NCBI RefSeq assembly: GCF_006345805.1
Contig: NC_043012.1
Span: 37,820,001 to 37,884,000, forward strand
Direction of reading: 5' to 3'
DNA length: 64,000 nucleotides
Origin: Octopus sinensis
Lineage: Eukaryota
Each line of letters begins with the position of its first letter. The first letter of the stretch is position 1. Shown here in pieces: positions 17,240-44,903 of the stretch. The position numbers were made by a program, and so were the translations under genes. The notes under the pieces were generated by a model. It was not told the origin of the DNA. It searched no databases and saw only the letters and a program-made list of their open reading frames with translations.

Positions 17240-17302
17240 TTTGAGCTGACGAAAGAAATGCTGATTTTATTTGGCTAATCTTGAAACGTTGACGTACTCA
17301 AA
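17240..17302 (+). ncRNA. Type I hammerhead ribozyme with complete core (H2), sense in GEN1 intron 2; predicted cleavage after 17296
   Basis: UUUGAG CUGACGA AAGA aau GCUGA uuuuau UUGGC uaa UCUU GAAA C GUUGAC GUA^CUCAAA. Stem I is 6/6 Watson-Crick. Confidence 0.8.
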
Positions 17303-17599
17303 CGATCTATGTACTTGTGATATTTTTCTGTATTTACCCCCAAACCTTCGTGAGCTGTCTAGAGTAAACATTATCTGAGAGAAATTTTCTTTAAGTAGTA
17401 GAAATGCTAAGAAAATTTTTTTTGGCTGCTATTTCTACTAAGTTCAGTATGTGGCAAAGTAATTTATTTTACTAAGCCCTAATTATATAATGTAATATTT
17501 TGAATTCGCCTTAAATGGTCCTTTTACATACTGAACACTTGGTGAAATTGATTAATTAATTAATTTTACCCTCAATTGTTGATATATATATATGTATGT

Positions 17600-20056
17600 A
17601 TCATCATCATCGTTTAACATCCGCTTTCCATGCTAGCATGGGTTGGACGATTTTGACAGGACTTGCGAGCCAGATGGCTGCACCAGGCTCCAGTCTTGAT
17701 CTGGCAGAGTTTCTACAGCTGGATGCCTTTCCTAACGCCAACCACACCAAGAGTGTAGTGGGTGCTTTTTACATGCCACTGGCACGAGGGCCAGTCAGGC
17801 AGTACTAGCAATGACCTCGCTCGAATCTTTTTACACGTGCCAGTGAAGCGACATTAGTAACAATCACACTCGAATTGTGCACTTGTACGTGCCATGGGTA
17901 TGGAAGCCAGTTGGCTGCTCTGGCAATGATCACGCTCGGATGGTGCTCTTGGCACCCTACTAGCACAGGCATGAGTGCCAATAAGGCGACGCTGGTAACG
18001 ATCATACTCGAATAGCCGCTCTGTCAACGATCACACTCGTATGGTGCGCTTTGAACCCTGCTAGCACCAATGCCAGTCATCGAATTGATTTTGATTTCAC
18101 TTGCCTCAACAGGTCTTCACAAGCAGAGTTTAGTGATCAAAGAAGGAAAAGGTACGCATAAGTGGGTTGGTTACGCTCCTGGCATAGGCCACGAGGTTAT
18201 GGTCTCATTTGGCTTGCTGTATCTTCTCAAGCACAGCATATTTCCAAAAGTCTTGGTCACTAGTTATTTCCTTGGTGAGGCCTAATGTCCGAAGGTCATG
18301 ATTCACCACTTCATCCCAGGTCTTCCTGGGTCTACCTCTTCCACAGGTTCCCTCAACCGCTAGGGTGTGGCACTTTTTCACACAACTATCTTCATACATT
18401 CTCGCCACATGACCATACCCGCGCAAACGTCTCTCTTGCACACCATAACTGATGCTTCTTAGGTCCAACTTTTCTCTCAAGGTACTTACACTCTGTCGAG
18501 TATGCACATCCAATGGAACATACTGGCTTCATTCCTTGCAAGCTTACGCATGTCCTCAGCAGTCACAGCCCATGTTTCACTGCTGTGTGGCATGGCTGTT
18601 CGTCCACATGCATCATACAGTCTACCTTTTACTCTGAGCGAGAGGCCCTTTGTCACCAGCAGAGGTAAGAGCTCTCTGAACTTTGCCCAAGCTATTCTTA
18701 TTCTAGCAGCTACACTTTCAGTGCACCCTCCTTCGCTACTGACTTGGTCACCTAAGTAATGGAAGCTATCAACTACTTGTAGTTTTTCCACCTGGAATGT
18801 GGCAGAAGTTGGTCTCTGCATATTTCCAGTGTTTAATCCCCCCTGAGCATCTGCCACATACAAAACTATCTTCCCAGTTAGCCTTCCTTTGATATTACTG
18901 CACCTCTTATGTGTCCATAGCTTACACTGGGTTTCTACCTACGCCTCTTCTACAGATCGAGCAGGGCCATCTACCTGAAGGGATTTGTGGTTTGCCTGCC
19001 TTCCTACTTATTAGGACTTTGGTTTTCGCTAGGTTGATTTTAAGGCCCTTTGATTCTAATCCTTGTTTCCACACTTGAAACTTCTCCTCTAGTTCTGATA
19101 GTGACTCAACAATTAGAGCAAGGTCATCAGCATAGAGGAGCTCCCAGGGGCATCCTGTCTTGAATTCCTCCGTTATTGCCTGCAGGACTATGATAAATAG
19201 GAGGGGGCTGAGGACTGAACCCTGGTGGACCCCAACCTCTACCTTGAATTTTTCAGTGTACATGTTGCCAACCCTCACCTTACTAGCAGCGTCCCTGTAC
19301 ATGGCTTGCATAGCTCTCACTAACCATCTATCCCTAGTTTCCTCATTGACCACCAGATAAGGGATCGGGGGACCCTGTCAAAGGCTTTCTCCATGTCAAT
19401 GAAAGCCAGGTACAGGGGCTTATCTTTGGCTAGGTATTTCTCCTGCAGCTGTCTCACCAGAGATATGGCATCAGTGGTGCTTTTCCCTGGCACGAAACCA
19501 AACTGCATCTCGTCCAAGTTGACTCTCTCCCTAATCAGTTGGGCTATGAGCCTCTCTGTAACCTTCATTACCTGATCCAAGAGCTTTATACCTCTGTAAT
19601 TAGTTGTATCTAGGGTGTCACCTTTACCTTTGTAGCAGTTGACTATTATGCTGCTACACCAGTCATTGGGTATGACTCCTTCGTGTATCACCTGGTTAAC
19701 TAAACGGCTGACTAGGCTGTAGCCGACACTACCAGATATTTTGAGCATCTCTGCAGTAATTCCTGATGGGCCTGGGGCTTTCCCTGTCTTCATGCTTCTA
19801 ATTGCCTTAACTACCAAGGAACTGTCAACTCGGATAGCTGGTCCCTCTGTTGGGTCGACATTCGGCAGACTCTCTTTATCCCATTCATTTTCTTTATTCA
19901 GCAACCTTTCATAGTGTCGTCTCCAAACCTCTCTCTTTGCATCCTCATTTCAGCACATATCGACAAATCTCCGTTCAAGCAACTCAACAATCTCACCGGA
20001 CCTACCTTTCAGTGTGCCGACGTTGAGAGTGCCAACCCTGAGGGTGTGGGAGGTTA
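17600..20056 (-). mobile_element. RTE-clade LINE (copy 2) with internal deletion of most of the endonuclease; frameshifted
   Basis: RT fragments 18205-19904. Tail (ATC)n at 17600. 19951-20050 encodes the endonuclease N-terminus TLRVGTLNVGTLKGRSGEIVELLERRFVDMC, joined directly to NEDAKREVW. Confidence 0.93.
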
Positions 20057-20068
20057 TATGTATATATA

Positions 20069-20122
<54 letters not shown>

Positions 20123-20127
20123 TATAT

Positions 20128-20520
20128 GTATATATCTTGTTTCAGTCATTAAACTGTGGCCATGTTGGAGCACTGCCTTGAAGAATTTTAGTCAAATGAA
20201 ATGGCTCTAGTACTTCCTTTTCTTTTTTTTAAGTCTGGTACTTATTCTATCAGTATCTTTAGCCGAGCCGCTATGTTATTGAGATGTGAACATTCTGGCA
20301 CCAGTTGTCAAGTGGTGGTGGGAGAGAAACTCAAATGCACATGCATGTATGCACTTGCATGCATGCACATGTATATATACACAAACGGGCTTCTTTAAGT
20401 TTCCATTTATCAAATCCACTCACAAGACTTAGGTTGACTCAAGGCTATAGTAGAGGACACTCACCCAGAGTGCTACACAGTGGGACTGAACCTGAACCAT
20501 GTGGTTGAGGAGCAAACCTC
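20128..20520 (-). mobile_element. CORE-like tRNA-derived SINE, near full length
   Basis: Head with GGTTCAGTCCCACTG and CCTTGGGCAAGTGTC-like segment, internal microsatellite, 3' half ending ATGACTGAAACAAG. Confidence 0.75.
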
Positions 20521-20659
20521 TTGTCCAATCCATGCCAGCATGGAAGATGCACTTTAAATGATGGTGATGATGATATGTATGTGTATCTATGACATGCACA
20601 CGCACATGATGAGCAGTTTTGATATATATACATATGTGCAAAAGAAGCATCATATGTGG

Positions 20660-21215
20660 TGTGCAAGAGAGACAACTGCACTGGTATGGTCATGTGTTGC
20701 GTATGGATGAAGACAGCTGTGTGAAAAAGTGTCACACCCTATTAGTAGAGGGAACCTGTGGAAGAGGAAGACCTGGGATGAGGTGGTGAAGCACAACCTT
20801 TGAATGTTGGGCCTCGTGGAGAGGAGGATGAGTGAGTGAGGCCTCTGGAGAGATATGCTGTGCTTGAGAAGATCCACCAAGCCAAGCGAGACCGTAACCA
20901 TGGCCTATGCCAGTGCAGCATAACCAGCCCGTTTAAGAGTACTCTTCAGTTATTGGACAATAAACTGTTCTTGCGAAGACCTGTTGAGTCAAGTGAAGTC
21001 CTTGTGGCCATTGCCAGTACTGCCTGACTGGCTCCCGTGCCGGTGGCATATAAGAAGCACCCACTACACTCTCGGAGTGGTTGGCAATAGGAAGAGCATC
21101 CAGCTGTAGAAACCTTGCCACATCAGATTGGAGCCTGGTGCAGCCTCCTGGCTTACCAATTCTCAGTCAAGCCGTCCAACCCATGCCAGCATGGAAAGCG
21201 GATGTTAAACAATGA
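20660..21215 (+). mobile_element. RTE 3' fragment with tail
   Basis: Encodes QERQLHWYGHVLRMDEDSCVKKC-like sequence, followed by the same 3' UTR as the large RTE copies. Confidence 0.75.
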
Positions 21216-21503
21216 CGAATTGCATGTGTGTGTGTATAAGAATTAAGTACAGTTTTCCTAAAAATGCATTAACCCTTACAAGACAACAGGGCTGAGCTGT
21301 CGGCCGAAAAGTTGAAGGACAGAGATTGCATTAGTTCATTCAATTTCCTATATATGTAAAGTAATTATTTTTTATAATTTATTTTGAGAAATGAGTGCAT
21401 GTATTTTGTAGGGCTTATGAAAAGCTCTCCTGCTTCTTGACACTGAAATTTCCAGTGAGACTCTGTCCCCAAAGTGTTAAATATCTTTTATCTTGAATCA
21501 CAG

Positions 21504-21705
21504 AAACCTGTTCTTCCGTGTGAACCACTTATTACTCAGTGGAATAGATTTAGTATTTATTATCGATGGTCGTGCTCCTGAAATGAAGGCAGAGACAATG
21601 CGAAAACGCCAAAAGGAGTGTTTCTTGTATAGAAAATCATCTCAGAATAACTTCTGGACATGCAAGAATACCAAAAGATCACATTTGAATGCATTTGTTA
21701 AAAAG
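21504..21705 (+). CDS. GEN1: GEN1 coding exon 2
   Basis: CAG acceptor, NLFFRVNHLLLSGIDLVFIIDGRAPEMKAETMRKRQ...RSHLNAFVKK, donor GTAAAA. 202 nt, phase-compatible. Confidence 0.95.
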
Positions 21706-22144
21706 GTAAAAATTTACTTCAAATTTTTTATTTTCCCTCCATTTTTTATATAATATTTGGCCATTTTCTCCTTGTTTTATATAATTTTTTTGCTTAATCT
21801 GTGCTTCTCATTTTCTTTCATAATTATGATTTATCTTATTTGTGTGTGACTTTGGTTGTACATGTCCCCAAGGTTTAAAGATATATGTACCAGTAATATT
21901 TTCGTGTCAATCCAGTCAGCTTTGCCCTACACTGTGGCCTCGAGCCAAAGATGACACTCAGTACCTAAAATACATAAATTGATAGAGTTATATCTATATG
22001 CTCTATGTTCAAATCCTGTTGATTTTTACTTATTCTGTCATTTTCATTGGGTCCATAAAATAAGTACCAGTTAAATACTGGTGTTGATTTAATTGAATGT
22101 ACCTTCCCCTAAATTATTCCTCTTAAGACTCTATACCTTCTCTG

Positions 22145-22274
22145 CAAATTTGACCACTTACACCTCTGTAGCCTCTTCCCAAATTTGACCACTTACACCT
22201 CTGTAGCCTCTTCCCAAATTTGACCACTTACACCTCTGTAGCCTCTTCCCAAATTTCTCTCCTTACACCTCTGT
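22145..22274 (+). repeat. 35-bp minisatellite, 3 identical copies plus a partial
   Basis: Unit CAAATTTGACCACTTACACCTCTGTAGCCTCTTCC starts at 22145, 22180, 22215 and 22250. Confidence 0.9.
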
Positions 22275-23984
22275 TAGAAATCATTATGAGCCAACAAAAC
22301 AACCTCTGTGCAATCACTCATTATGCTAGAATTAGCAGCCAAATCTCCCTCAAATTTAACCTTTTCTCCTTTAAAAATGGATGAATATCTTGGATAAGTT
22401 TATCCTGTATATTCTAGTCATAATTATAATCAAGAAGCTGGAAAGAAAGAAATTGGGGAGCTTATGGGTCAGTATGAATGGAACAATGTCAGAATGACAC
22501 ACAAATATATTTCAATGATATCCAGAAATGACAAATGTAGTATCATCTTTGATGAAGTGCTGCTTTTGGCACAGACCACATTAACCTTTTTCTTACCGTA
22601 TTTCTTTTGGAATACACTGCCTTTATTTCAAATACCTTTGAAAATATTGAAGGGTTTAGTAAAATAATTTTATTATTAATCCAGTGTTTGGTATGTAAAT
22701 TAAGAGGCAACTTTGATGGGAAATTTAAATTTGGATCCTTTTAAAATGAGAAGTTTGTGTGATAGTCCCAGGTAGGTTTGTATCAGAAGGTTGCAGGCAT
22801 TGCTTCGAGGTTAAGAAGTTTACTTTGTAACTGATTAGTTTTAGGTTTAATCTCATTGCGCAGCACTTTGGGCAAGAGTTGGGAAAGCCCTGTGAGTGAA
22901 ATTTGGTAGACAGAAACTGCATGGAAGCCCATTAGAAAGAGTTCACTTTTTTCTTGGGTGTTAGACTTAATCCATTGCCCAGATAAACAATGTAGTGCTT
23001 GCCTTGGGTACCTTCAGTGGAAGACATCCTCTAAAGGTGCCTGGGTATTCAGGTCAGGTCTCCCATGTGATGGTCAGTCTTAGAGGCCCTGGAAATGTCC
23101 ATGAGTGCTGCTGTCTTTCCTGCCCTCGCTCAGTCATATATTATCATCGTTGTTGTCATTGTTTAATGTCTTCCTTCCAGGCTGGTTGTCATAGAAGCAG
23201 TGTCATTCATCCTCCTCTTCATCATCATCATTTAACGTCCGTTTTCCATGCTGGCATGGGTTTGATGGTTTGACTGAAGGCTAGCAAGCCAGTAGGCTGC
23301 ACCAGGCTCCAGTCTGATGTGGCAAGGTTTCTACAGCTGGATGCCCTTCCTATCACCAACCACTCCGAGAGTGTAGTGGGGTGCTTTTTATGTGCCACCG
23401 GCACGGGAGCCAGTCAGGTAGCAATGGCATCGACCACTTTCAGAAGGTGCTTTTTACATGCCACTGGCATGGGAGCCAGTCGGTGGTGGGGAGGTGCACT
23501 TCCAGTAATTCTGTAAGAACATGTCTGGCCAGGGGAAAATATCACCTTACTTGGAAACAGGTGAGGGTTAATAACAAGGAGAGCATCCAGCTGTAGAAAA
23601 TATGCTTCAAACTCTGTCTGATTCATACAAATATGGAAAACTGGATGTAAATGATGTTAGTAATCATGCCTTATTATCATCTTCATGATTCTGTGTCCAT
23701 TTTCCATACTGGTATAGGTTGGATGTGTCTCACAATATCTCATCACTCATCACCATATTCCATGCCATCTAATATTAAAAACCAGCAGAAACCAGTCAAC
23801 ATCATTGCATGTGTTCTGGGTGTATACTCTAGTGCCACCACCACTGCAAGGAAACTCCTCTTAACTCCTAAATGTTCAAGCTGGTCGTATCGGGCCCACA
23901 TATCCTGCCTATTTTATGTTCAAACTGTCCAGGTCTCTCTCATCTACCCTACAATGTCATTCTTCAAATAAACAATTACAATTA

Positions 23985-24255
23985 CACCTTTCAAGCGTTG
24001 GGCCTCATGGAGGCAATGGCAAGTGACCAAGACCTTTGGCAATATGCTGTGCTTGAGCAGAAGACCCGTCAAGCCAAGTGAAATCATAGTCGTGGCAAAT
24101 ACAGGTGTCACACAACTGGCACCCTTGCTGGTGGCGTATAAAAGCTATTACACTCTCAGAGTGGTTGGTGTTAGGAAGGGCATCCGACAAAATCAGACCG
24201 GAGTCTGGTGCAGCCCCTCAGCTGGAAGATAAATGATGATGATAATGATGACGAC
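23985..24255 (+). mobile_element. RTE 3' fragment
   Basis: LQALGLMEAMASDQDLWQYAVLE-like ORF end plus a (GAT)n-type tail. Confidence 0.65.
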
Positions 24256-24602
24256 GATGGCATATTTCTATCCTTATCCATGTGCATACAAAGCATGCTT
24301 CTTAAACTACATGGGTATGCCTGTACCTCAAAGCTACATGAAAAGAAAAATGTTCTGTTTTCATTCATTAATTCTTGGATTAAATATTTCAGTCAGTTAT
24401 TTAAATGAAATGCAAGGTGAGATTTCCTCTGAGCTGCAACTCTAAAATTCCTTCTTCCGTATCTTTTGTTGCAAATATTGAACACTCGACTGAATGCCAA
24501 AACGTTGACAGAACGAGAACAGTGAAGAAGTTTCAATAAAAATAGTAAATAGTCGAGTGTATTGGCATGGATGTGGCAACATTTGAAATATTGTCGAGGT
24601 AT

Positions 24603-24674
24603 ATGTGGCTGATGAAGATAAATCAAATATATGTGGGCAGACATATTTTGAAGAATCTGAAACCGGTACCACAT
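24603..24674 (+). ncRNA. Type I hammerhead ribozyme with complete core (H3), sense in GEN1 intron 3; predicted cleavage after 24668
   Basis: AUGUGG CUGAUGA AGAU aaau CAAAUAUAUGU gggcag ACAUAUUUUG aaga AUCU GAAA C CG GUA^CCACAU. Stem I is 6/6. Stem III is the palindrome ACCGGU (dimer type). Confidence 0.8.
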
Positions 24675-24860
24675 TATCCCTTTCTAGGTATTTCATTTTT
24701 CAGATGTTCTCCCTAGAGGTAAGACAATTTTTTTCATGTTTGTTGCACACACGCATTTTTGCTAGTACATACGCAGTGAAGCTATACATTAACGTCGTAT
24801 TTATTATGTTCGCTATTTTCCAGTAAATATCGGTACTTTGTTGTGCCATTTATTTACTTT

Positions 24861-24898
<38 letters not shown>

Positions 24899-25096
24899 AC
24901 GGGCTTCTTTCAGTTTCTGTCTACCAGATCCACTCACAAGACTTTGGTCGTCCCGAGGCTATAGTAGAAGACACTTGCCCAAGATGCCACGCAGTGGGAC
25001 TGAATTGGAACCATGTGGTTGGTAAGCAAGCTACTTACCACACAGCCACTCCTGCACCTATAATTTTAATTTTCTCTTTTTTTTGTTGGTTTTCAG

Positions 25097-25186
25097 TGTT
25101 GTGAGTTGCTGGATTGTCTTGGAGTGCCATATTTGGAAAGTCAAGGAGAAGCAGAGGCCTATTGTGCTTTCCTTAATAAACATGGT
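25097..25186 (+). CDS. GEN1: GEN1 coding exon 3 (XPG-I, EAEA motif)
   Basis: CCELLDCLGVPYLESQGEAEAYCAFLNKHG. TTTCAG acceptor, GTAAGT donor. 90 nt. Confidence 0.95.
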
Positions 25187-25313
25187 GTAAGTTATATCTT
25201 TTATCTTATGGGTGAGAGCATATCTTTTGATGTGGGTCATCCCTGTTTAAGCATGGTTATGAAGACTGTCCTGTCTTTTAAAAATATCTTGGATTATATT
25301 ATAATATTATAAT

Positions 25314-30081: not shown

Positions 30082-30119
<38 letters not shown>

Positions 30120-34414: not shown

Positions 34415-34449
<35 letters not shown>

Positions 34450-35225: not shown

Positions 35226-35950
35226 TGTGCTGGACAAAGCACATCTCTAAAATTGTCAAGAAGGCCGAGGGTATCTTGACATCATTCAGCAAGATCTTTG
35301 TCAGCAGCTCTCCAGTTATCTATTTAAGGCTGTATATGGCTATGGTGTAGCCACACTTGCATCATCAGTCTGGAACCCCTATCTTGCTCAGGACATCAAC
35401 CTCCTGGATACTGTTCAGAGACATGCAACCAAGCAAATACCCTCCATCAGGCATCTACCATACTCTGAATGCCTTGCTTCCCTGGGCATAGATACATTGA
35501 AGCTCCGATGTCTGGCAACTGACTTGGTAAACACCCACAAAATTAATAACCATCGTGCCAACAACCACCCTGAGCACCTTTTTGAGCTCCATGTGTCTAA
35601 CACATGTGGGCATGGCTACAAAGTCAGGAAACAGCATACCTCCCATGACTTTCTGAACATTTTTTCACACTCAAGAGTTGCTGAAGCATGGCACAAACTG
35701 CCTGCATCAGTTGTTAGTTGCTGAGACATTGCATCCTTTAAAACCTCCATGTTTCCTGAAATTCGCCAACACTACACTTGATATCCCCTCCTGCTCCATA
35801 CGCATGCACACATGTATATCGTGGCTCATACACTGTTCACTTTCCTGACTTTGGTACATAATTCTATGTACTCTACATGCACCTTTGAGGAGTTGTAGTG
35901 CACCTGAGCACTGTGCACAATAGTTTCATTATTATTATATTATATTATTT
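35226..35950 (+). mobile_element. CR1/L2-group LINE 3' relic
   Basis: ASSVWNPYLAQDINLLDTVQRHATK...GHGYKV...FSHSRVAEAWHKLP, followed by an (ATT)n-like tail. Confidence 0.75.
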
Positions 35951-36229
35951 TATGTCGTTCTCCTCATTCTGTCACAAAAACACCAAAGCAAAATAGCCGC
36001 CATCATCATTATAAAACTGTTTTTCCATGCAAATATGAGCGAGATGATAATGCCATATTTTCCGGCATACAAGCTGATATTGTGTTATAGTGTAAACATG
36101 TAGTGTAAACATTCAAACATTGTTGCTGTCTTTCCAAATCCTCCTGCATTTCACATGGATTTTTGGTCGTCCAAAATCGTCTTTGTGTAGAAGCTGACCT
36201 GCCATTTTTTAACTACAAGTTTTGCTCTT

Positions 36230-36615
36230 TTACTCTTTTACTTGTTTTAGTCATGTGACTGTGGCCATGCTGGAGCACTGCCTTTAGTCGAGTAAATCGA
36301 CCCCAAGACTTATTCTTTGTAAGCCTAGTACTTATTCTATCAGTCTCTTTTGTTAAACCACTAAGTTACGGGGATGTAAGCACACCAGCATCGGTTGTCA
36401 AGCGATGTTGGGGGGGACAAACACAGACACATAAACATATATATATATATACGACGGGCTTCTTTCAGTTTCTGTCTGCCAAATCCACTCATAAGGCTTT
36501 GGTCGGCCTGAGGCTATAGTAGAAGACGCTTGCCCAAGGTTCCACGCAGTGGGACTGAACCCGGAACCATGTGGTTGGTAAGCAAGCTACTTACCACACA
36601 GCCACTCCTGCGCCT
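36230..36615 (-). mobile_element. CORE-like tRNA-derived SINE, full length and well preserved
   Basis: Head GGCGCAGGAGTGGCTGTGTGGTAAG...GGTTCAGTCCC on the reverse complement. Confidence 0.85.
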
Positions 36616-36785
36616 ATAAGAATTAATGCTGTGAACAGGATCTGAAAACTTCAACTTGTGTGCCAGAAAATATGATAATGACAGCGGTCATGATGAAAAG
36701 GAAGACAATGAAACAGTTGATGATACCAAGAATAATAATATTCTTCTTTTGTTGTTACGTTTTTATTTACTCATCTATATTGTAG

Positions 36786-36869
36786 ATAATTGAAGAATTC
36801 TTAGTTTCTAAAGATGTTTTACCAAAGAACAATCTTCAGTGGAAAAGTCCAAATATGAAGAAATTCGAG
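36786..36869 (+). CDS. GEN1: GEN1 coding exon 7
   Basis: IIEEFLVSKDVLPKNNLQWKSPNMKKFE. TGTAG acceptor, GTGAGA donor. 84 nt. Confidence 0.9.
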
Positions 36870-38176
36870 GTGAGATTTCTACTAATCACAACATAATTGT
36901 TTTGTTCATGAATGTGTGTGAGTCTCTACAGAACCACCTCATCCATTAGAAATAACTGCCAAATCACAGCTTTTATTATTTGTGTAGTACCATTGGCTGG
37001 GCTTGAACCATGTATCATGGCACTCCACATTATAGACACAAAACAGAACAATACCATTAGTTATTACAAACATAACATGAGGCAGAACAATAGTACCACT
37101 GGTAGGATTTGAACTATGTATCTATCACTTGCTATTTGACTATGTCACCAATAATTCTACAGACTTCCTGCCATTACCAATTCTTAAGTTCATCATCATC
37201 ATTCAGTGTCCGTTTTCCATGTTAGTATGGACTGGATAGGTCGACAGGAGCTGGCAAGGCTGGAGGGCTGACCAGGCTCCAGTCGTCTGTTTTGGCATGG
37301 TTTCTATAGCTGGATGCCTTTCCTAACACCAACCTCTTTACAGAATGTACCAAGTGCTTTTTATGTGGCACCATCCATTGACAGAGTCACCAAGTGTCTT
37401 GCAAGACAAAAGTTGTTGATGTAGTTTCAACTTAACAATTTTATGAAAGCAACACTTTCTTTATTGTGTAATTGGTAAATCGGCTGACAGGTGTGCAACA
37501 CAGGTAGTTCAAGTGCCAGCTGCAGATTCATCACTATTTTCTGTTTCAGGCAGCTTCTTATGGCAACTCCTCCTGCTAGAAATAACAGCCAGATCTCTCT
37601 TAAATCACACTCTACTTTCTTTAAAGAAGAAAATGAAGAATCGTCTGGTGATCATAATATGAATTTGTTCTCATTTGGAGTCACTGTCCTCCTCAGTATG
37701 ATCAGAGTACCACACCTGACTCACACATTTTATTTGAGGCTTAGTTTTTTGCAGCTGTCTGCCCTTCTTACCACTGGGTGTTCTGGGTGCCTTTTGGCAC
37801 CAGCACAAGTAAGGTAGTTGTGTCCTCAATAAGATTAAAGGGTTTTCTTGACCGAACAGTACATATTGGGTAACATCATCAACATTTAATGTCCATTTGA
37901 CTGGATCTGGTGAGCCACATGGCTGCATTGTGCTTCATGTTAGCTTTGGCATGGTTTCTATGTTAGGATGGCTCTTTCTAACACCAAATCTGAAATAGAA
38001 TATGTCTAAAAAGACAGGACAGTCAAGGCTAGATTGTCTTTGATCATAGGTATTGTTAATCAGGATGAACCCAGTGCTAAACAACATTAAAATTTTATAA
38101 ATTATTTTTTCATTCATGTTTTTCTTGTTATTCTAGAGATAATTATATAAGTACTTGTTTCATGTTACTTTTATAG

Positions 38177-38316
38177 AATTTCATGGCTGTCAATCTGGAA
38201 TGGCCCAAAGATTATGCTGTGCAGAAAGTTCTACCACTTCTTACAAGATGGATTATGTTGGAGATAGTCGGTCTGGTCACAACTAAAACTCGTGGACTTT
38301 ATCTCACCCCTGTAAA
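38177..38316 (+). CDS. GEN1: GEN1 coding exon 8
   Basis: NFMAVNLEWPKDYAVQKVLPLLTRWIMLEIVGLVTTKTRGLYLTPV-K (EWPxxYA motif). Donor GTGAGT. 140 nt. Confidence 0.92.
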
Positions 38317-39482
38317 GTGAGTACCCTTTTCCAACACTACCACCATCACATTTACTACCAGTCCATATTTTATCACAAACGAACAACCACCACTACCACC
38401 ACCATCACATACCATTGACAAGACAAGGGAAAAAGTTATGTTCTGTGTTTGGTGAGACATGAAGAGTAGCAGCTGTCATGAAATGTGAAACCAAAATGTG
38501 GAGAAGCATTGTTGATTGTTGGAAGCATTGCAGCAGAAAAGGTGCTTCTCCTTGATCAGTTGTAAATGGAGGTTGCTCTTAAAATCTGGTACCCCGTTGG
38601 TTACATCAGTCTGGTCAATGGAAAAACCTGCTTGAAAAATTAATGTGCAAGTGGTTGAGCGTTCCACAGACATGCATGCCCCTAACATAGTCCTCAGAGA
38701 GATTCGGTGTGATACGAAATGTGTCAAAGCCAGCCCTTTGAAATACAGCTACAACTCATTTTTGCCAGCTGAGTGGACTGGAGCAATAAAGTGAAATAAT
38801 GTGTCTTGCTCAAGGACACAATGCCTTTGGCAATCGAACCCGCAACCTTACAAATGTGATCCAAAATACTTGAGCCACAGGTGTTGCTCTTACACGGTAA
38901 CGTACGACCACATATCGCCCAAGTCACTCAGGAAAAGCATTTGGCAGTGAATTTAGAAGTTTTGCCTCATCAGCCTCGTTCTCTTCATCTGACTCAATTT
39001 TTCAGAACATTGCAACATTATTTTATTTAGAAAAGTGGCTCTCAACTGGGGTCCATATGACCTTTGGCGGGGTCCATATAAGATTTTGTCGTTAAAGTTT
39101 ACATGAAATAAATTGATTATATTTCTAAAGTTAACAAAATATTAAAAAATTTTTTTGATACAATTCCTAATAATATTATATAGATGATACATAAAAAAAA
39201 AAACAACAGCAGACGTTTTTTTAAGCATCAAATGGCTGTGGGGATTCAGTAGGGGTTCATAGGCAAAAAATGGTTGCAGACCACTGATTTCGAGAGAAAA
39301 CAGTTAATTAATTGTGATGAGGTTAGAAATGATATTTAGTGTTTTGTTGCTTCCAAAGCTGAAGAATTTTATGCGCAAGTGATCAATGATATGCTAAATA
39401 GTTGGGATTTTACAGTTCTATATTTAAGAGATGAGGAATTATTTACATTTGACGGATATTTGTCCTCATCTTCTTTGTTGTT

Positions 39483-39528
39483 AACACAATGTTTTGGCTG
39501 ATATACCCTCCAGCCTTCATCAGGTGAC
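39483..39528 (-). ncRNA. Decayed hammerhead (G12A, G16.2A)
   Basis: GUCAC CUGAUGA A GGCUG gaggguauau CAGCC AAAAC AUU GUGUU. Confidence 0.6.
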
Positions 39529-39683
39529 TTGGGGAAATTTTGAACCTGGGTTCTCATTCTTAAGGTATTTTTCGATGTTGTTGTTGTTCAGGTCACTGCC
39601 AGGAATCGAACTCAGAATCTTGGGGTTAGTAGCCTGCACTCTTAACCACTACACCATATGCCAAGTTTGATTTCAGGCAGTGA

Positions 39684-39720
<37 letters not shown>

Positions 39721-40006
39721 CATCGTTTAGCATCCGCTTTCCATGCTGGCATGGGTTGGACTGTCCAACTGGGGTCTGGGAAGCCAGAAGGCTGCACCAG
39801 GCCCAGTCTGACCTGGCAATGTTTCTACAGCTGATATGCTCTTCCTAACGCCAACCACTCCATGAGTGTAGTGGGTGCATTTTACGTGCCACCGGCACGG
39901 AGGCCAGGCGAGGCTGGCAATGGCCATGATCGGATGGTGCTTTTTACGTGCCAATAATATCGCAAAATACCTTAGGAATGAAAACGCAGGTTCGAAATTT
40001 CCCCGA

Positions 40007-40052
40007 GACACCTGATGAAGGCTGAAGGGTATATCAGCCGAAACATTTTGTT
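40007..40052 (+). ncRNA. Hammerhead with CUGAUGA and GAAAC intact but stems I and III damaged
   Basis: GACAC CTGATGA A GGCTG aagggtatat CAGCC GAAAC ATT TTGTT. Confidence 0.65.
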
Positions 40053-41180
40053 AACAACAAACAAGATGAGGACAAATATCCATCAAATGTAAATAATATA
40101 AGATGGGATTTTGTTATGAAATAATGAGGGAAATATCTTGATGAAATCAATTAAAATCCTAGAAGCATTTATCCTCACTACCCCCCCCCACTCCATCTTG
40201 AAATGCGACACAACTTTCTTTCCAACCTAATTTATGTAGTATATATATCTGTTTCTCTATCAGCCAATCAATCAATCAATCATCATCATTTAACATCCGT
40301 TTTTCCATGCTGGTATGAGTTGGACAGTTTGATGGGAGCTGGTAAAGCCAGGAGGGTGGGGAGGGCACACCAGACTCCATTGTCTGTGGTTTCTATGGTT
40401 AGATGTCCTTCCTAACACCAAACACTTTGCAATCAATCATCAATATATATCATCATCATCATTTAATGTCCATCTTCCATGCATTCATGGGTAGGATGGT
40501 TGACAGGAGCTAGCCAGGTAGAAGACTACCCCAGGCTACTCTGTCTGTTTTGGCAGGGTTTTTACAGCTGGATGCCCTTCCTAACACCAACCACTCTGCA
40601 GAGTTGACTCAGTGCTTTTCACTTGGCACTAGCACAGGTGAGGTTAGTTTCAGCATGATTTTTACAGCTGGATACCCTTCCAAACACCAACCACATTACA
40701 GTGGGGACTGGATTTTTTAAATGTGGCATCAGCAATGGCAGGGCAACCAAGAAGTAACTCGCAAGACAAGGAATTATGAGAGAAGGAACTTGTGTCAGAG
40801 GATGAAAAGTTAGTGTTGTGACAGAGAGACAGAAAGAAACAGAAGCAGATGTCTTGCCACAACAGAGTGGGGGGTGGGGCATTAGAAGAGGAGGTGATCC
40901 AGTATCACATGATGAAAGGTTAGACTATAACAGAGAAAGAGGGAGGCGCAAATAGGTGTCTTGCTATAGAGAAGCTACATATTAGGCTTCTGTGTGGTTT
41001 CTGCTTATTGCATTACACTCATACAACCCATGGGTACGATCAAAGACACCTGCCTAAGTTTTTGCACTGCAGTCTTAAACCTAAGAACATTTGGTTACAA
41101 ATCAAACTTCATAAACCACATAACCATACCTGAACCATACCTGAACCATTTTTAGCTCAGTAAATTTCTTGACATTGTAG

Positions 41181-41242
41181 AATCCTAAAGAATCGAGTTT
41201 GTAAAGGTGTACAATCTGTTGAAGTGGAATGGAAAATTTCAG
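41181..41242 (+). CDS. GEN1: GEN1 coding exon 9 (chromodomain)
   Basis: ILKNRVCKGVQSVEVEWKIS-G. TTGTAG acceptor, GTGAGT donor. 62 nt. Confidence 0.92.
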
Positions 41243-41734
41243 GTGAGTTATTTTATTTATGTATATATTTTTTTGTTTCTAATTCCTGTCTTGTGGACAG
41301 AGGTCAGTGTCGGTTGAGTTGCTTAGCTCTAGGTCAGGCCACGCTGAATATATTCATGATCAAAGATTTTTCAACTATGATAATTTTTTTTTTCTTTTTC
41401 GATAAAATCAGCTTTCTAGAATTATATTATCTAAACTTTTCTCCTTTTGGAAGTCTAAAATGAGAATTGATGGAGATAATTGATGCTTACTATCTGTGTG
41501 TGTGTGTGTGTGTGTTTGAATACATGTGTGAGTGTATGACTGCGTGTGTGTATGTCTGAATATACATGTGAGTGTATGACTGTGTGTGTGTTTGAATATG
41601 TGAATGCATGACTGTGTGTGTTTGAATATGTGTGAGTGTATGATGATGTGTGTGTGTGTTCGAATACATGTGAGTGTATGGCTGTGTGTGTCTGTGTTCT
41701 TGTGTTCATCTCTATGCATGTGTATGTCTGTGTT

Positions 41735-42110
41735 CTCTTATTCTTTTACTTGTTTCAGTCTTTTGGAGCACTGCCTTAAAGGGTTTTAGTCGAACAGATC
41801 GACCCCAGGACTTTGTAAGCCTAGTACTTATTCTATCGGCCTCTTTTTGCCAAACTGCTAATTTACAAGGACATAAACACACCACCGCCAGTTGTCAAGC
41901 AGTGATGGTGGTGGTGGGGAGAAACACAGACACATTTACATATATACATACATACACATATATATATACGACTTGCTTCTTTCAGCTTTCCGTCTACCAA
42001 ATCCATTCACAAGGCTTTGGTTGGCCGGAGGCTATAGAAGACACTTGCCCAAGGTGCCACGCAGTGGGACTGAACTCAGAACCAAGTTTCTTAGCACACA
42101 GCCATGCCTG
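41735..42110 (-). mobile_element. CORE-like tRNA-derived SINE, near full length
   Basis: Same family as 36230-36615. Confidence 0.75.
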
Positions 42111-42471
42111 TGCCTGTATATATATATAAATATATATCATCATCATCATTTTCTGTTTTCTATGCTGGCATGGGTTGGACACTTTGATAGGAACTATCCA
42201 GCCAAAGATCTGTCCAGGCTCCAGTTATCTGTTGATTTCTACAGCTGGATGCCCTTCCTAACGCTGCCACTCCAAACGTGTAATGGGTGCTTTTTACATA
42301 CCACTTACATGACACCAGCATCGGCCACAGCTATGCTTTCACTTGGATTGACAAATCTTCTCAAGCACAGCACATCACCAAGGTCTCAGTCACTTGTCAT
42401 TGCCTCATATGTATGTCACTGGATGGAGTACTTTTTAAGTTGAACTTACCTCAGTGGAACAGATATATATA

Positions 42472-42514
<43 letters not shown>

Positions 42515-42757
42515 TTCATATACATATATTTTGGATGATGCTGTATCAGTTTTGCTAGTTATATTTTTAATTATTTGATTATTTGATGTCCACCCACCAA
42601 TAGGAATTCATCATGTAGAATTTTAGCTGAACCTTACCACAAGCAGTGAACCCTGAAGAAGGAAATATCATTCGATGGAATTGAATAAGGACTGTTCCTA
42701 CAGCCCCTTAACATTTACTGAAACAGCCATAGGTTTTAACTGACTTTTACCTACCTG

Positions 42758-43033
42758 CAGTGGCAGACTGGCCAGGTTGCCAGCTTGCCTGATGGCATGT
42801 GGGCCCCTGCACCATTAGAATCCATTTATGGTGGCCCATGTTAGTATCTCCTCAAATTTGAGAATTTTTTATTCACTCCTCAAAGGATGCATTATTCCAG
42901 CCTGGCTGTGTTTGTAGACAGTTGAAAAGAATACTTTAAACAAAAAGAATAAAATTAAATGATAGCATTGGAGTTGCGGGTGGGCCCCCTTACTCTCCTG
43001 GCAACTAATATTTTTAGACCCAGTCTGCCACTG
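42758..43033. mobile_element. hAT-type MITE
   Basis: 14-bp perfect TIR CAGTGGCAGACTGG. 8-bp flanks CCTACCTG and CTTACATG match at 6/8. Confidence 0.7.
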
Positions 43034-43483
43034 CTTACATGATATCGTGTATTACTGAACTCTCTTTATTCTCCCTTGAATACATGTATCTACACACGCA
43101 TACATGGTTTTCATGTTATATCTTAATTCATTTACACTTTATATCTTATTATTCTTATTTTTATATTATCTTTTATTCAAATTTTTAATATAAACAGGTA
43201 TCCCATCCAAGCCTTATAAATCACTAAAAGCAGGATTTCATTTTCGGATGTAAAATACTGACAACTGAAATATTTAGGTTCTACAAAGAAAATTTTATAT
43301 ATATATATATATACATACATATATATTTAAAATTGCAATTCAGAAATGTGCTTTCCTCCACTATTATCAAAGAAAGGAAATGAAAGTAAAACCAAATGTC
43401 AAAATAGAATGGGTGATTCTATTGGGGTAAATTATAAGTTATATATTATAGGTAGATTATAAAAAAAATTTGCCCTATATAGT

Positions 43484-43855
43484 AGGAGTGACTGTGTGGT
43501 AAGTAGCTTGCTTACCAAGCGCATGGTTCCAGGTTCAGTCCCACTGCATAGCATCTTGGACAAGTATCTTCTACTGCAGCCTCGGGCTGTCCAAAGCTTT
43601 GTGAATGGATATGGTAGGCAGAAACTGAAAGAAGCCTGTCATGTGTGTGTGTGTATGTTTGTGTGTCTGTTGACAACTGATGTTGGTATGTTTACGTCCC
43701 CATAATTTTGCAGTCCAGCAAAAGGGACCAAAAGATTAAGTACCTGGCTTACAAAGAATAAGTCCTGGGTTTGATTATTTTGACTTAAAGTGTAGTGCTC
43801 CAGCATGGCCACAGTTGAATGACTGAAACAAATAAAAGAGTAAAGGAGTATAACA
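43484..43855 (+). mobile_element. CORE-like tRNA-derived SINE, full length
   Basis: Starts GGAGTGACTGTGTGGTAAGTAGC and ends AAATAAAAGAGTAAAGG. Confidence 0.8.
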
Positions 43856-43987
43856 AAGCATGCTAAAGTGAAACCGTACAAAATGAATAGTGTGAAAACT
43901 GAAGACTGTTTTCCCCATACATGCTTGCATGTATGTATATATAATATATACATACATGCTTGCATGTATGTATATATAATATATATA

Positions 43988-44230
43988 CAGGGTTGGGCAA
44001 AAGTCACCTGACAGTAAATCGAAACCATTTAATTCCAAGATTAAAACAAAAAAATTAGTTTACATGTGACTTCAGTAATAAATAAATGGTGGGGGGGGGG
44101 AAGAAATGGTGATTTTTAACTCACAACATTCAATTATTAAACATTCATAATTGGAATGAATAAATAAAATTGAATATTAAGTATTTATGGAATTTTTGAT
44201 TTACTGTTGGGTGACTTTTGGCCAACCCTG
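43988..44230. mobile_element. Tc1/mariner-type MITE
   Basis: About 33-bp imperfect TIR CAGGGTTGGGCAAAAGTCACC...AGTAAATC, flanked by TA on both sides. Confidence 0.8.
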
Positions 44231-44474
44231 TATATGTTTTATATACATATATATATTAAAAGAAATGAGGTAATCAGAAGATCGGATGGTTCATATTTAT
44301 AGATATTTATTTATATATTACATTTTTTACATATATATATATCATATCATTCAGATTATTAGCGCTTTCTCCCATTCTAGAGGGGTTTTCAAATCAAATT
44401 GGTCAGCCTGAGGCTATAGTAGAAAAAACTTGCCCAAGGTTCCACACAGTGGGACTGAACCCAGTGGGACTGAC

Positions 44475-44903
44475 CAATCAAGGAACGGCCATAATAGGCC
44501 ATTCACCCACTAGAAATAACAGCCAAAACTGGTTAGTTCCGTAATGGAATCGGCGGCTTATATTTATTTGCTGCCGATAAATTTGGCGCGAGTGCGACGA
44601 TTTGAAAATTTTAGGTCAGATATTGGCGAGGCATGGACGTGAATGCCTCGTGAAAAATATCTGTTCCGATTTGGCTATTCCTTACTGATGAATCTAAGGG
44701 CCTATGGTAGATTGGCTTGATTTAATTTAATCAGGTTAGTTTACCATTAAACAGTAGACGAAACGGTGCATCGTATAAGGAATTTCAGGGTAATGTTTTT
44801 TTAATTTTCTCCTGGTTTACAGAATTAATGTTATTTTGCGGTTGAAGCTTTTTGGCTGTTATTTCTAGTGGGTGAATGGCCTATTATGGCCGTTCCTTGA
44901 TTG
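44475..44903 (+). mobile_element. 429-bp element with perfect 54-bp terminal inverted repeats enclosing hammerhead H4
   Basis: 44475-44528 is the exact reverse complement of 44850-44903. The repeat includes TTTGGCTGTTATTTCTAG, a motif that recurs downstream of other hammerheads. Confidence 0.85.
44677..44783 (+). ncRNA. Type I hammerhead ribozyme with complete core and extended stem II (H4), sense in GEN1 intron 10; predicted cleavage after 44775
   Basis: AUUCCUUA CUGAUGA A UCUA [7x7 loop + 19-bp hairpin 44704-44747] UAGA C GAAA C GG UGCA UC GUA^UAAGGAAU. Stem I is 8/8. A10.1-C11.1 mismatch. Confidence 0.8.

What the first reader, a model, noticed from the sequence alone, without database searches (positions are those of the whole stretch)
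17240..44783. A DNA-repair gene whose pre-mRNA carries three independent, core-intact self-cleaving ribozymes
Seen: H2 (intron 2), H3 (intron 3) and H4 (intron 10) are all sense-strand and come from different families. Two more sense copies (16240, 40007) are mutated. Known: PLE-associated hammerheads are widespread in animals, and intronic ribozymes can cut nascent RNA and compete with splicing. Inference: GEN1 output, and perhaps that of many long cephalopod genes, may be tuned by a race between splicing and intronic self-cleavage. Alternatively, the retained sense copies are only slow or dimer-dependent variants (A-U, A-C closing pairs) that selection tolerates.
Basis: partly seen in the sequence, partly recalled or inferred. 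Interest (0 to 1): 0.85.

Follow-up and report, generated by a model that had tools for sequence, protein, structure and literature searches.

The report
Retroelement hammerhead relics in octopus introns
Three (probably four) hammerhead-ribozyme motifs do lie in the sense strand of introns of the octopus GEN DNA-repair gene, but they look like young leftovers of Penelope-like retroelements and nothing suggests they regulate the gene.

Summary
A structural descriptor finds core-intact type I hammerhead motifs on the + strand at 17240-17302, 24603-24674 and 44677-44783. It also finds one on the - strand (15948-15903) and a weaker + strand one (47973-48072). Two null models give 0.03-0.04 hits per window against 4 observed. 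The host is Octopus sinensis flap endonuclease GEN on the + strand, so the motifs are intronic and sense.

The regulatory reading is not supported. H2 and H3 are absent from the gap-free orthologous introns of O. bimaculoides, and no intronic motif occurs in Argonauta. H4 is missing even from O. vulgaris, which is 98% identical. H1 has a dead core in O. vulgaris. H2 and H3 show no excess conservation.

Every motif is followed 160-280 nt downstream by a (TA)n tract, and several lie in inverted duplications. That matches published 5'-truncated Penelope-like element insertions, which carry the hammerhead near their 3' end.

All copies are solitary, lack the usual G10.1-C11.1 pair, and have weak or palindromic helix III. 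Published data show such motifs cleave poorly as monomers, and that slow intronic hammerheads do not block splicing. This is an ordinary finding: new members of a known kind.

The parts
17240..17302 (+). H2: type I hammerhead motif. Helix I 6 bp, CUGACGA, helix II of 30 nt closed by A10.1-U11.1, GAAA, helix III ACGUUGACGU, cleavage after GUA. Lies in CDS intron 1.
   Evidence: Identical in O. vulgaris. Absent from gap-free O. bimaculoides intron 1.
24603..24674 (+). H3: type I hammerhead motif. Helix I 6 bp, CUGAUGA, structured 43-nt helix II closed by A-U, GAAA, helix III reduced to the perfect palindrome ACCGGU, GUA. Lies in CDS intron 2.
   Evidence: z -3.0. Identical in O. vulgaris, which also has an inverted second copy. 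Absent from the 283-bp O. bimaculoides intron 2.
44677..44783 (+). H4: type I hammerhead motif. Helix I 8 bp, CUGAUGA, 68-nt helix II with a 19-bp inner stem and an A10.1.C11.1 mismatch at its base, GAAA, helix III ACGGUGCAUCGU, GUA. Lies in CDS intron 9, 315 nt upstream of cassette exon 10.
   Evidence: z -5.1. Missing at the orthologous O. vulgaris site.
47973..48072 (+). H5 (probable, weaker): CUGAAGA, 12-bp helix II with U.U at its base, GAAA, C-G plus ACGA loop, GUA. Helix I is only 4 bp. Lies in CDS intron 10.
   Evidence: decoy null at helix I >=4 is 0.075 against 5 observed; z -3.35. Present in O. vulgaris with 1 substitution. A (TA)n tract lies 270 nt downstream.
15903..15948 (-). H1: compact hammerhead, antisense to GEN. 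Helix II UGGG/CCCA, helix III is the perfect palindrome ACAUGCAUGU, GUC.
   Evidence: It is one arm of an inverted duplication (I8/I10). The core is GUGAUGA (dead) in O. vulgaris.
16240..16285 (+). Inverted sister copy of H1 with C3-to-G (GUGAUGA) and a GUU triplet. The core is inactive.
44475..44903 (.). 429-bp carrier unit of H4, bounded by perfect 54-nt inverted repeats (44475-44528 and 44850-44903). No target-site duplication. It is part of a 608-bp segment (44402-45009) absent from O. vulgaris.
24560..24864 (+). Carrier unit of H3, about 305 bp: 43 nt, the hammerhead, then 190 nt, ending at (TA)n. Present as a palindromic pair in O. vulgaris.
17040..17581 (+). Carrier unit of H2, about 540 bp, flanked on both sides by (TA)n-type microsatellite.
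24865..24896 (.). (TA)n tract 191 nt downstream of H3. Equivalent tracts lie at 17582-17593 (H2, 280 nt), 45009-45060 (H4, 226 nt), 48342-48370 (H5, 270 nt) and 15660-15680 (H1 on the - strand, 223 nt).
   Evidence: A random site has such a tract within 300 nt with P=0.114. All four of H1-H4 together: about 1.7e-4.
13676..51640 (+). Host gene: O. sinensis flap endonuclease GEN homologue. CDS exons at about 13676-13864, 21502-21705, 25094-25189, 30578-30664, 31025-31213, 34112-34228, 36786-36869, 38177-38317, 41179-41244, 45092-45220 and 48422-51640.

Best explanation
H2, H3, H4 and probably H5 are genuine hammerhead-type sequences carried into the GEN introns by heavily 5'-truncated Penelope-like retroelement (PLE) copies, or non-autonomous derivatives of them. 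The insertions went into (TA)n microsatellites in the O. sinensis/O. vulgaris lineage.

In the parent element the hammerhead lies near the 3' end, inside the pseudo-LTR. It is thought to process multimeric element transcripts, and its palindromic helix III lets two neighbouring copies pair into an active dimer.

In the GEN pre-mRNA each motif is a solitary relic. No partner copy is present to form a dimer, the usual G10.1-C11.1 pair is missing, and no loop-loop contact is recognisable. Self-cleavage should therefore be slow or negligible, and the introns should be spliced normally. The motifs are neutral passengers of intron expansion, not regulators of GEN.

Shown: the motifs, their sense orientation, their youth and lack of conservation, the (TA)n and inverted-copy insertion signature.
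Inferred: the PLE parentage, the low activity, and the absence of an effect on GEN.
For: - The motifs are real. The two null models give 0.037 and 0.025 hits per window against 4 observed.
- The insertions are lineage-specific. GEN spans 38 kb here, 14 kb in O. bimaculoides and 10 kb in Argonauta. Window 14435-21168 (H1, H2) and 21935-25064 (H3) have no counterpart in the gap-free O. bimaculoides introns 1 and 2. Argonauta introns are all 170-600 bp and hold no hammerhead.
- H4 and about 600 bp around it are missing from O. vulgaris.
- H1 is dead in O. vulgaris.
- There is no excess conservation. P(0 substitutions) is 0.27 for H2 and 0.22 for H3 at 2.1% divergence. The two O. vulgaris H3 arms differ at 1.6% outside the motif and 0 of 72 inside it.
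- The insertion signature fits PLEs. Every motif has (TA)n 160-280 nt downstream in its own orientation (P about 1.7e-4 for H1-H4). Inverted duplicates occur at H1, at H3 in O. vulgaris and at H4. This matches published PLE features: 5' truncation, an adjacent inverted truncated copy, the hammerhead near the 3' end in the pLTR, and microsatellite/(TA)n targets (PMC8557442).
- PLEs are counted among recently active TE orders in O. vulgaris (PMC13282606).
- Solitary PLE hammerheads, and pairs 100-700 bp apart on opposite strands, are the norm. A single motif showed no detectable cleavage in vitro (PMC4209133).
- A hammerhead with a 1-bp helix III and a palindromic tetraloop cleaves about 6% per hour as a monomer (PMC7229834).
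- Introns cut by a hammerhead are still spliced. Only a fast ribozyme blocks splicing (PMC2995048).
Against: - No PLE reverse transcriptase or GIY-YIG ORF lies next to any unit.
- No second copy of any carrier unit exists in the roughly 140 kb of octopod DNA available, so family membership and copy number are unproven.
- H2 and H4 have helix III stems of 3-4 bp that could support monomeric cleavage.
- H3, H4 and H5 are unusually well structured (z -3 to -5).
- Four of five motifs in the gene are sense.
- H4 lies just upstream of an annotated cassette exon.
- No activity data exist.
Confidence: 0.77

Rival explanations
1. The sense hammerheads cut nascent GEN pre-mRNA fast enough to compete with splicing, so that GEN output (or inclusion of exon 10) is tuned by a kinetic race.
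For: - The cores are intact and in sense orientation.
- Helix III of H2 and H4 is long enough for a monomer.
- H4 lies 315 nt upstream of exon 10, which isoform X2 skips.
- Fast ribozymes in introns can abort splicing (Fong 2009, as cited in PMC2995048).
Against: - None of the motifs is conserved outside the O. sinensis/O. vulgaris pair, and H4 is absent from O. vulgaris.
- H2 and H3 show no excess conservation.
- The helix II closing pairs are non-canonical, and no tertiary loop contacts are recognisable.
- PLE-type single motifs cleave poorly in vitro (PMC4209133, PMC7229834).
- Slow hammerheads leave splicing intact (PMC2995048).
- A count of 4 sense to 1 antisense is not significant (one-sided P about 0.19).
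Confidence: 0.07
2. The motifs do self-cleave at an appreciable rate in the nascent intron, but without consequence. The upstream exon stays tethered to the polymerase and spliceosome, and the cut intron is simply degraded.
For: - The cores are intact.
- Helices I and II appear in the minimum-free-energy folds of all motifs.
- Exon-tethering experiments show normal splicing of hammerhead-cut introns (PMC2995048).
Against: The same structural weaknesses apply: A-U or A.C at 10.1-11.1, and solitary copies of a dimer-type helix III, especially in H3. The hammerhead-compatible fold is 0.3-3.4 kcal/mol above the MFE. No RNA data exist.
Confidence: 0.12
3. The motifs are chance matches to a permissive consensus and are not hammerhead-derived at all.
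For: - Rfam hammerhead models do not score them at any threshold.
- The helix II inserts are unusually long, and the closing pairs are non-canonical.
Against: - Both null models give 0.03-0.04 hits against 4 observed, and no decoy core gives 2 or more hits.
- Rfam also misses the textbook H1.
- The motifs share idiosyncrasies (GAAAC, GUA, an A-first helix II, a long structured helix II) that recur in an Argonauta motif.
- They share a common downstream (TA)n spacing.
Confidence: 0.02
4. The elements are intronic box C/D snoRNAs: a UGAUGA C box near a terminal stem, in a sense intronic location.
For: Weak snoR12 hits fall at exactly the H2 and H3 coordinates (13.9 and 14.9 bits). A sense intronic position is typical of snoRNAs.
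Against: - The scores are far below the gathering threshold (39 bits).
- No CUGA D box lies next to the 3' strand of the terminal stem in H2, H3 or H4.
- The C box of H2 is UGACGA.
- The elements are not conserved in O. bimaculoides or Argonauta.
Confidence: 0.01

Closest known systems
Minimal type I hammerheads of Penelope-like elements (Cervera & de la Pena 2014, PMC4209133; Craig et al. 2021, PMC8557442)
   Same: - Type I topology with an intact core.
- Short or palindromic helix III (ACCGGU, ACAUGCAUGU).
- Larger than usual helix II.
- Mostly solitary genomic copies, or pairs on opposite strands a few hundred bp apart.
- Carried by 5'-truncated insertions with adjacent inverted copies at (TA)n microsatellites.
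   Different: - 10.1-11.1 is A-U, A.C or U-A instead of the highly conserved G-C.
[quoted passage not shown]
- Helix II is far longer (30-68 nt).
- The triplet is GUA.
- No RT/GIY-YIG ORF or direct pLTR lies nearby.
Metazoan non-LTR retrozymes (PMC7229834; bioRxiv 10.64898/2026.07.22.740005)
   Same: Type I hammerheads in short, AT-rich, non-coding units of a few hundred bp. Monomeric dispersed copies exist. Cleavage depends on dimers when helix III is 1 bp plus a palindromic tetraloop, as in H3.
   Different: There are no tandem repeats here, and circular RNA expression has not been examined. In Xenopus retrozymes are depleted from introns, although about 44% still overlap them.
Conserved intronic hammerheads of amniotes (HH9 and HH10; de la Pena & Garcia-Robles 2010, from my own knowledge) and the intronic CPEB3 HDV-like ribozyme
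   Same: A sense-strand self-cleaving motif inside an intron of a protein-coding gene.
   Different: Those are conserved at orthologous positions over tens to hundreds of millions of years and are scored by Rfam models. These are absent from congeneric or sibling species and are not scored.
Engineered intronic ribozyme reporters (Dye et al. 2006; Fong et al. 2009, as summarised in PMC2995048)
   Same: They provide the mechanistic frame for the proposed race between cleavage and splicing.
   Different: Those experiments show that only fast ribozymes block splicing, while standard hammerheads do not. The octopus motifs are predicted to be at the slow end.

Membership tests
Hammerhead ribozyme, type I | Conserved core C3 U4 G5 A6 N7 G8 A9, G12 A13 A14, the A15.1-U16.1 pair, and H17 at the cleavage site | tested here: met
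   H2, H3 and H4 (also H1 and H5) have every core position. The triplet is GUA, or GUC in H1.
Hammerhead ribozyme, type I | Three helices around the core, with helix I open and helices II and III capped | tested here: met
   Helix I is 6, 6 and 8 bp. Helices II and III are capped. Helices I and II are present in the unconstrained MFE folds.
Hammerhead ribozyme, type I | G10.1-C11.1 closing pair of helix II | tested here: not met
   A-U (H2), A-U (H3), A.C (H4), U-A (H1), U.U (H5). PMC4209133 calls this pair highly conserved.
Hammerhead ribozyme, type I | Loop 1 / loop 2 tertiary contacts needed for fast cleavage at physiological Mg2+ | tested here: inconclusive
   Helix I is open-ended with no loop or bulge that I could recognise. 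The loop 2 sequences are unrelated to each other. No tool here scores tertiary contacts.
Hammerhead ribozyme, type I | Match to the curated Rfam hammerhead covariance models | tested here: not met
   No hammerhead family was hit at gathering score or at E<=10, on the whole window or on 140-160 nt sub-regions. The test has low power, because the textbook H1 also fails.
Hammerhead ribozyme, type I | Demonstrated site-specific self-cleavage | not testable with these tools
   Needs in vitro transcription assays or mapping of RNA ends.
Penelope-like element pLTR hammerhead | Palindromic 15.2-16.2 / loop 3 that allows dimeric helix III | tested here: met
   H3 (ACCGGU) and H1 (ACAUGCAUGU) are perfect palindromes. 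H2 (ACGUUGACGU) and H4 (ACGGUGCAUCGU) are imperfect.
Penelope-like element pLTR hammerhead | Located in a pseudo-LTR flanking an RT plus GIY-YIG ORF | tested here: not met
   Only LINE-type RT and APE-type endonuclease ORFs are in the window. Stop-free frames of the carrier units hit no Pfam family. This is compatible with truncated copies but does not prove them.
Penelope-like element pLTR hammerhead | PLE insertion anatomy: 5' truncation, adjacent inverted copy, hammerhead near the 3' end, microsatellite/(TA)n target | tested here: met
   (TA)n lies 160-280 nt downstream of every motif. Inverted duplicates occur at H1, H3 (O. vulgaris) and H4. The features are as described in PMC8557442.
Penelope-like element pLTR hammerhead | Member of a multi-copy family with covarying helices across genomic copies | not testable with these tools
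   No octopus whole-genome collection is searchable here. No further copies were found in about 140 kb. The bait searches failed.
Non-LTR retrozyme | Head-to-tail tandem repeats of 150-450 bp, each with a hammerhead | tested here: not met
   No direct repeats of the units were found.
Conserved functional intronic ribozyme (HH9/HH10 or CPEB3 type) | Orthologous conservation across species, with constraint on the motif | tested here: not met
   H2 and H3 are absent from the gap-free O. bimaculoides introns 1 and 2, and no intronic motif occurs in Argonauta. H4 is absent in O. vulgaris; its O. bimaculoides intron is an assembly gap, so it cannot be judged there. H2 and H3 show no excess conservation.
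Box C/D snoRNA | C box (RUGAUGA) and D box (CUGA) juxtaposed by a terminal stem | tested here: not met
   No D box lies next to the 3' stem strand. The snoRNA model scores are 14-15 bits against a gathering score of 39.

The most novel reading that the evidence does not exclude
At least one of the monomer-competent sense copies (H2, or H4 with its 3-4 bp helix III) may cleave nascent GEN pre-mRNA fast enough to lower mRNA output or to favour skipping of the adjacent cassette exon 10. Presence or absence of H4 would then be a recent, TE-borne difference in regulation of a DNA-repair gene between O. sinensis and O. vulgaris.
Probability: 0.06. Interest if true: 0.65.

Novelty: new member of a known kind. 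Interest (0 to 1): 0.22.

Why it matters
If the regulatory idea were true, it would be a natural case of transposon-delivered ribozymes competing with the spliceosome, which so far has been shown only with engineered reporters.

As the evidence stands, the locus illustrates something already known. PLE-type hammerheads are scattered by the thousand through invertebrate genomes, and many land in introns.

Two modest points are useful.
- Rfam's hammerhead models miss this whole class, so genome annotations under-report them.
- The octopod copies share an unusual build: A-U at 10.1-11.1, a GUA triplet, a 30-80 nt structured helix II, and (TA)n about 200 nt downstream. That build could seed a proper octopus-wide model and an orientation test.

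The H4 presence/absence difference between two sibling octopus species offers a ready natural experiment.

Tried and rejected
- **Rfam.** I ran it at gathering score, at E<=10 on the whole window, and on three small sub-regions. There was no hammerhead hit, but it is uninformative because H1 is missed too.
- **C/D snoRNA reading.** Rejected.
- **LINE RT bait.** I used the window's LINE RT ORF to pull in random octopus loci for a density and orientation sample. Nearly all hits were from other phyla and only one was from O. vulgaris, so I abandoned it.
- **H3 frame bait.** I used the 79-aa stop-free frame across H3 to find other copies. It gave two irrelevant weak hits.
- **Pfam on stop-free frames of the four carrier units.** Nothing was found.
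- **Pairwise alignment of the carrier units and BLAST against all held loci.** No shared family and no further copies.
- **Target-site duplications around the H4 unit.** None. The segment is a complex rearrangement that includes a 63-nt piece 100% identical to an inverted SINE fragment at 45547-45609.
- **U3-A8 covariant core scan.** No hits.
- **Ensemble fraction in a hammerhead-compatible fold.** It was 0.1-13% for the bare motifs and lower in some flank contexts. This cannot be interpreted without a calibrated positive control, so I did not use it.
- **The apparent 7% divergence between the O. vulgaris H3 arms.** This seemed to make the identical hammerheads significant, but it was an artefact of alignment across the palindrome centre. 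The true arm divergence is 1.6%.
- **Absence of H4 in O. bimaculoides.** I cannot claim it, because that intron is an assembly gap.

Full report
**1. Observation**

I wrote a structural descriptor for a type I hammerhead. It requires a helix I 5' strand, CUGANGA, helix II of at least 3 bp (one closing mismatch allowed, up to 100 nt), GAAA, helix III of at least 1 bp, UH, and a helix I 3' strand of at least 5 bp.

On the + strand it returns 17240-17302 (H2), 24603-24674 (H3) and 44677-44783 (H4). On the - strand it returns 15948-15903 (H1). With helix I relaxed to 4 bp, one more + strand candidate appears at 47973-48072 (H5).

Two independent nulls show this is not chance.
- 300 dinucleotide-preserving shuffles give a mean of 0.037 hits per window on both strands, never more than 1.
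- 240 scrambled decoy core boxes, run on the real sequence so that its inverted repeats are kept, give a mean of 0.025 and a maximum of 1.

Rfam reports no hammerhead at gathering score, at E<=10 on the whole window, or on 140-160 nt sub-regions. It also misses H1, which is a textbook compact hammerhead. The negative result therefore reflects the models and not the sequences.

**2. Host gene and orientation**

The 1121-aa ORF at 48275-51640 is 100% identical to Octopus sinensis LOC115220307, 'flap endonuclease GEN homolog 1' (XPG_N, XPG_I and chromo-like domains). tblastn places 11 CDS exons on the + strand between 13676 and 51640.

H2, H3, H4 and H5 lie in CDS introns 1, 2, 9 and 10, all in the sense orientation. 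H1 is antisense in intron 1.

**3. Anatomy**

All core nucleotides are intact in H2, H3 and H4. The triplet is GUA in all three, and GAAA is followed by C.

Helix II is closed by A-U (H2, H3) or an A.C mismatch (H4) instead of the usual G10.1-C11.1. It is unusually long (30, 43 and 68 nt) and well structured. The folding z-scores are -3.0 (H3), -5.1 (H4), -3.35 (H5) and -0.9 (H2).

Helix III differs between the motifs.

| Motif | A15.1 to U16.1 segment | Form |
|---|---|---|
| H3 | ACCGGU | perfect palindrome, at best one or two pairs as a monomer |
| H2 | ACGUUGACGU | 3 bp plus tetraloop, imperfect palindrome |
| H4 | ACGGUGCAUCGU | 3-4 bp plus tetraloop, imperfect palindrome |

Helices I and II appear in the unconstrained MFE fold of every motif. 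The full hammerhead-compatible fold lies 0.3-3.4 kcal/mol above the MFE, because part of the CUGAUGA box can pair elsewhere.

The 16240 copy (16240-16285) is the inverted sister of H1 with C3-to-G.

The 40007 copy belongs to a 5-copy SINE-like family. That family conserves CUGAUGA, a hairpin and (G/A)AAAC, but it never has a cleavage triplet followed by a helix I 3' strand. It is not a decayed complete hammerhead in any copy seen here.

**4. Evolutionary test**

I fetched the orthologous loci of O. bimaculoides (L001), Argonauta hians (L002) and O. vulgaris (L003).

The gene spans 38 kb here, 14 kb in O. bimaculoides and 10 kb in Argonauta, where every intron is 170-600 bp.

- **H1, H2, H3.** Window 14435-21168 (H1, the 16240 copy and H2) and 21935-25064 (H3) have no counterpart in the gap-free O. 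bimaculoides introns 1 and 2. The flanks align at 87-90%.
- **O. bimaculoides intron 9.** It is mostly an N-run, so H4 cannot be judged there.
- **O. vulgaris.** It is about 98% identical and colinear. H2 and H3 are identical in it. At 2.1% divergence, zero substitutions has P=0.27 and P=0.22.
- **Second H3 copy.** O. vulgaris carries a second, inverted copy of the H3 unit. The arms differ at 1.6% outside the motif and 0 of 72 inside it, which is again unremarkable.
- **H1.** Its core reads GUGAUGA in O. vulgaris.
- **H4.** H4 and the 608 bp around it (44402-45009) are replaced in O. vulgaris by 172 bp of unrelated palindromic sequence.

None of the motifs is therefore old, conserved or under detectable constraint.

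**5. What carried them**

The carrier units are 300-550 bp and non-coding. They are unrelated to each other in sequence. They share an insertion signature.

- Every motif is followed, in its own orientation, by a (TA)n tract. A random site has such a tract within 300 nt with probability 0.114, so all four of H1-H4 together have P of about 1.7e-4.

| Motif | Distance to downstream (TA)n (nt) |
|---|---|
| H1 | 223 |
| H2 | 280 |
| H3 | 191 |
| H4 | 226 |
| H5 | 270 |
| 16240 copy | 162 |
| O. vulgaris inverted H3 | 271 |

- Inverted duplicates recur. H1 and the 16240 copy lie in arms of 226 nt at 89%. The H3 unit is a palindrome in O. vulgaris. H4 lies between perfect 54-nt inverted repeats with no target-site duplication.

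Craig et al. (PMC8557442) describe PLE insertions in these terms: heavily 5'-truncated, often with an adjacent inverted truncated copy, with the hammerhead near the 3' end in the pseudo-LTR, and with an insertion bias for microsatellites, (TA)n being given as a preferred target. Cervera & de la Pena (PMC4209133) report that most PLE hammerheads are solitary, or paired 100-700 bp apart on opposite strands. PLEs are listed among the TE orders with recently active copies in O. vulgaris (PMC13282606).

An Argonauta motif just downstream of GEN (L002 15574-15681) has the same build: an A-U closing pair, an 81-nt helix II, GAAAC, the palindrome ACAAUUGU and GUA. This points to an octopod lineage of such hammerheads.

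What is missing is a PLE ORF nearby and further copies of each unit. No octopus genome is searchable with these tools, and two bait searches failed.

**6. How it most likely works**

In the parent element the palindromic helix III lets two copies in a multimeric transcript form an active dimer that trims unit-length RNA. In the GEN pre-mRNA each motif is alone. The helix III sequences of H2, H3 and H4 are not complementary to one another.

Published data fit a low-activity prediction.
- A single PLE min-hammerhead showed no detectable cleavage, and dimers showed low cleavage (PMC4209133).
- An axolotl hammerhead with the same helix III design as H3 cleaved 6% in an hour as a monomer (PMC7229834).
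- The non-G:C 10.1-11.1 pairs and the lack of recognisable loop-loop contacts argue in the same direction. The quantitative penalty for the closing pair is from my own recollection of classical mutagenesis and was not checked here.
- Introns cut co-transcriptionally by a hammerhead are still spliced efficiently, and only a fast ribozyme prevents splicing (Dye 2006 and Fong 2009, as summarised in PMC2995048).

The best-supported reading is that these are neutral passengers of recent intron expansion.

**7.

The race between splicing and cleavage is a real, experimentally established concept, but nothing at this locus calls for it. The orientation count is 3-4 sense to 1 antisense (one-sided P of 0.19-0.31).

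The one suggestive coincidence is that H4 lies 315 nt upstream of the 120-nt exon 10. Annotated isoform X2 skips exactly that exon (residues 372-411). This is worth a look because O. vulgaris lacks H4, but cassette exons are common and no causal link is shown.

A 2026 preprint reports that retrozymes are depleted from introns in Xenopus, although about 44% still overlap them (10.64898/2026.07.22.740005). This is consistent with mild selection against genic insertion and not with recruitment.

**8. Verdict**

The identification as PLE-type hammerheads is well supported by insertion anatomy, but not proven by family membership. The regulatory interpretation is unsupported. Novelty: new members of a known kind. 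Interest is low.

Noticed in passing
window 45099-45218 (exon 10): Annotated isoform X2 (XP_029646271.2) lacks residues 372-411. That is exactly this 120-nt in-frame exon, so it is a cassette exon. H4 lies 315 nt upstream of it and H5 lies in the intron after it.
   Followed up: partly
window 44475-44528 / 44850-44903: Perfect 54-nt inverted repeats would form a 54-bp dsRNA stem in the GEN pre-mRNA. That is a likely ADAR or Dicer substrate in an animal with heavy RNA editing. The adjacent 44402-44464 is 100% identical to an inverted SINE piece at 45547-45609, so the whole 608-bp segment looks like a recent templated rearrangement.
   Followed up: partly
window 25307-28785: A 3.5-kb segment holding one of three copies of an RT+PHD LINE is absent from O. 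vulgaris, so it is a presence/absence difference between the sibling species. The three LINE copies are at 8438-10185 (+), 18200-19950 (-) and 26326-28109 (+).
   Followed up: partly
window 1185 (-), 1313 (+), 39523 (-), 40012 (+), 58055 (-): A SINE-like family with a tRNA-like B box (GGTTCGAAA) carries a conserved CUGAUGA, hairpin and (G/A)AAAC 'half hammerhead', followed by the palindrome UGUUAACA. It has no cleavage site and no helix I 3' strand. It is unclear whether this is a relic, a split ribozyme, or coincidence.
   Followed up: partly
window 49444-50115: The last GEN exon holds about 14 tandem 48-nt (16-aa) coding repeats of the type TDATQLCTDPVEGSF. The repeat region is only partly matched in O. 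bimaculoides and Argonauta.
   Followed up: no
window 54645-54773: A near-perfect hairpin of about 120 nt scores 72 bits against plant and insect miRNA families (below gathering score). It is formed by two inverted SINE tails around an (ATG)n tract, so it is most likely a repeat artefact and not a miRNA gene.
   Followed up: no
L003 47891-48585 and 64674-64845 (O. vulgaris): O. vulgaris has palindromic structures at both the H3 and the H4 sites where O. sinensis has single-copy sequence. These are either real hairpin-prone hotspots or assembly artefacts of the kind reported for PLE insertions.
   Followed up: partly
L003 3001-71449; proteins P0125 and P0127: The O. vulgaris gene model (CAI9734280.1, 1719 aa) fuses an upstream THAP-domain gene to GEN. 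In O. sinensis and O. bimaculoides the THAP protein (209 aa) is annotated separately. This is probably an annotation merge.
   Followed up: no
L002 15574-15681 (Argonauta hians): A core-intact hammerhead with the same unusual build as H2-H4 lies about 400 bp downstream of the Argonauta GEN stop codon, on the gene's strand. It has no nearby (TA)n tract.
   Followed up: partly
whole gene, window 13676-51640: GEN introns have expanded about 3-4 fold in the O. sinensis/O. vulgaris lineage through nested SINE, LINE and PLE-like insertions. The gene spans 38 kb here, 14 kb in O. bimaculoides and 10 kb in Argonauta.
   Followed up: yes
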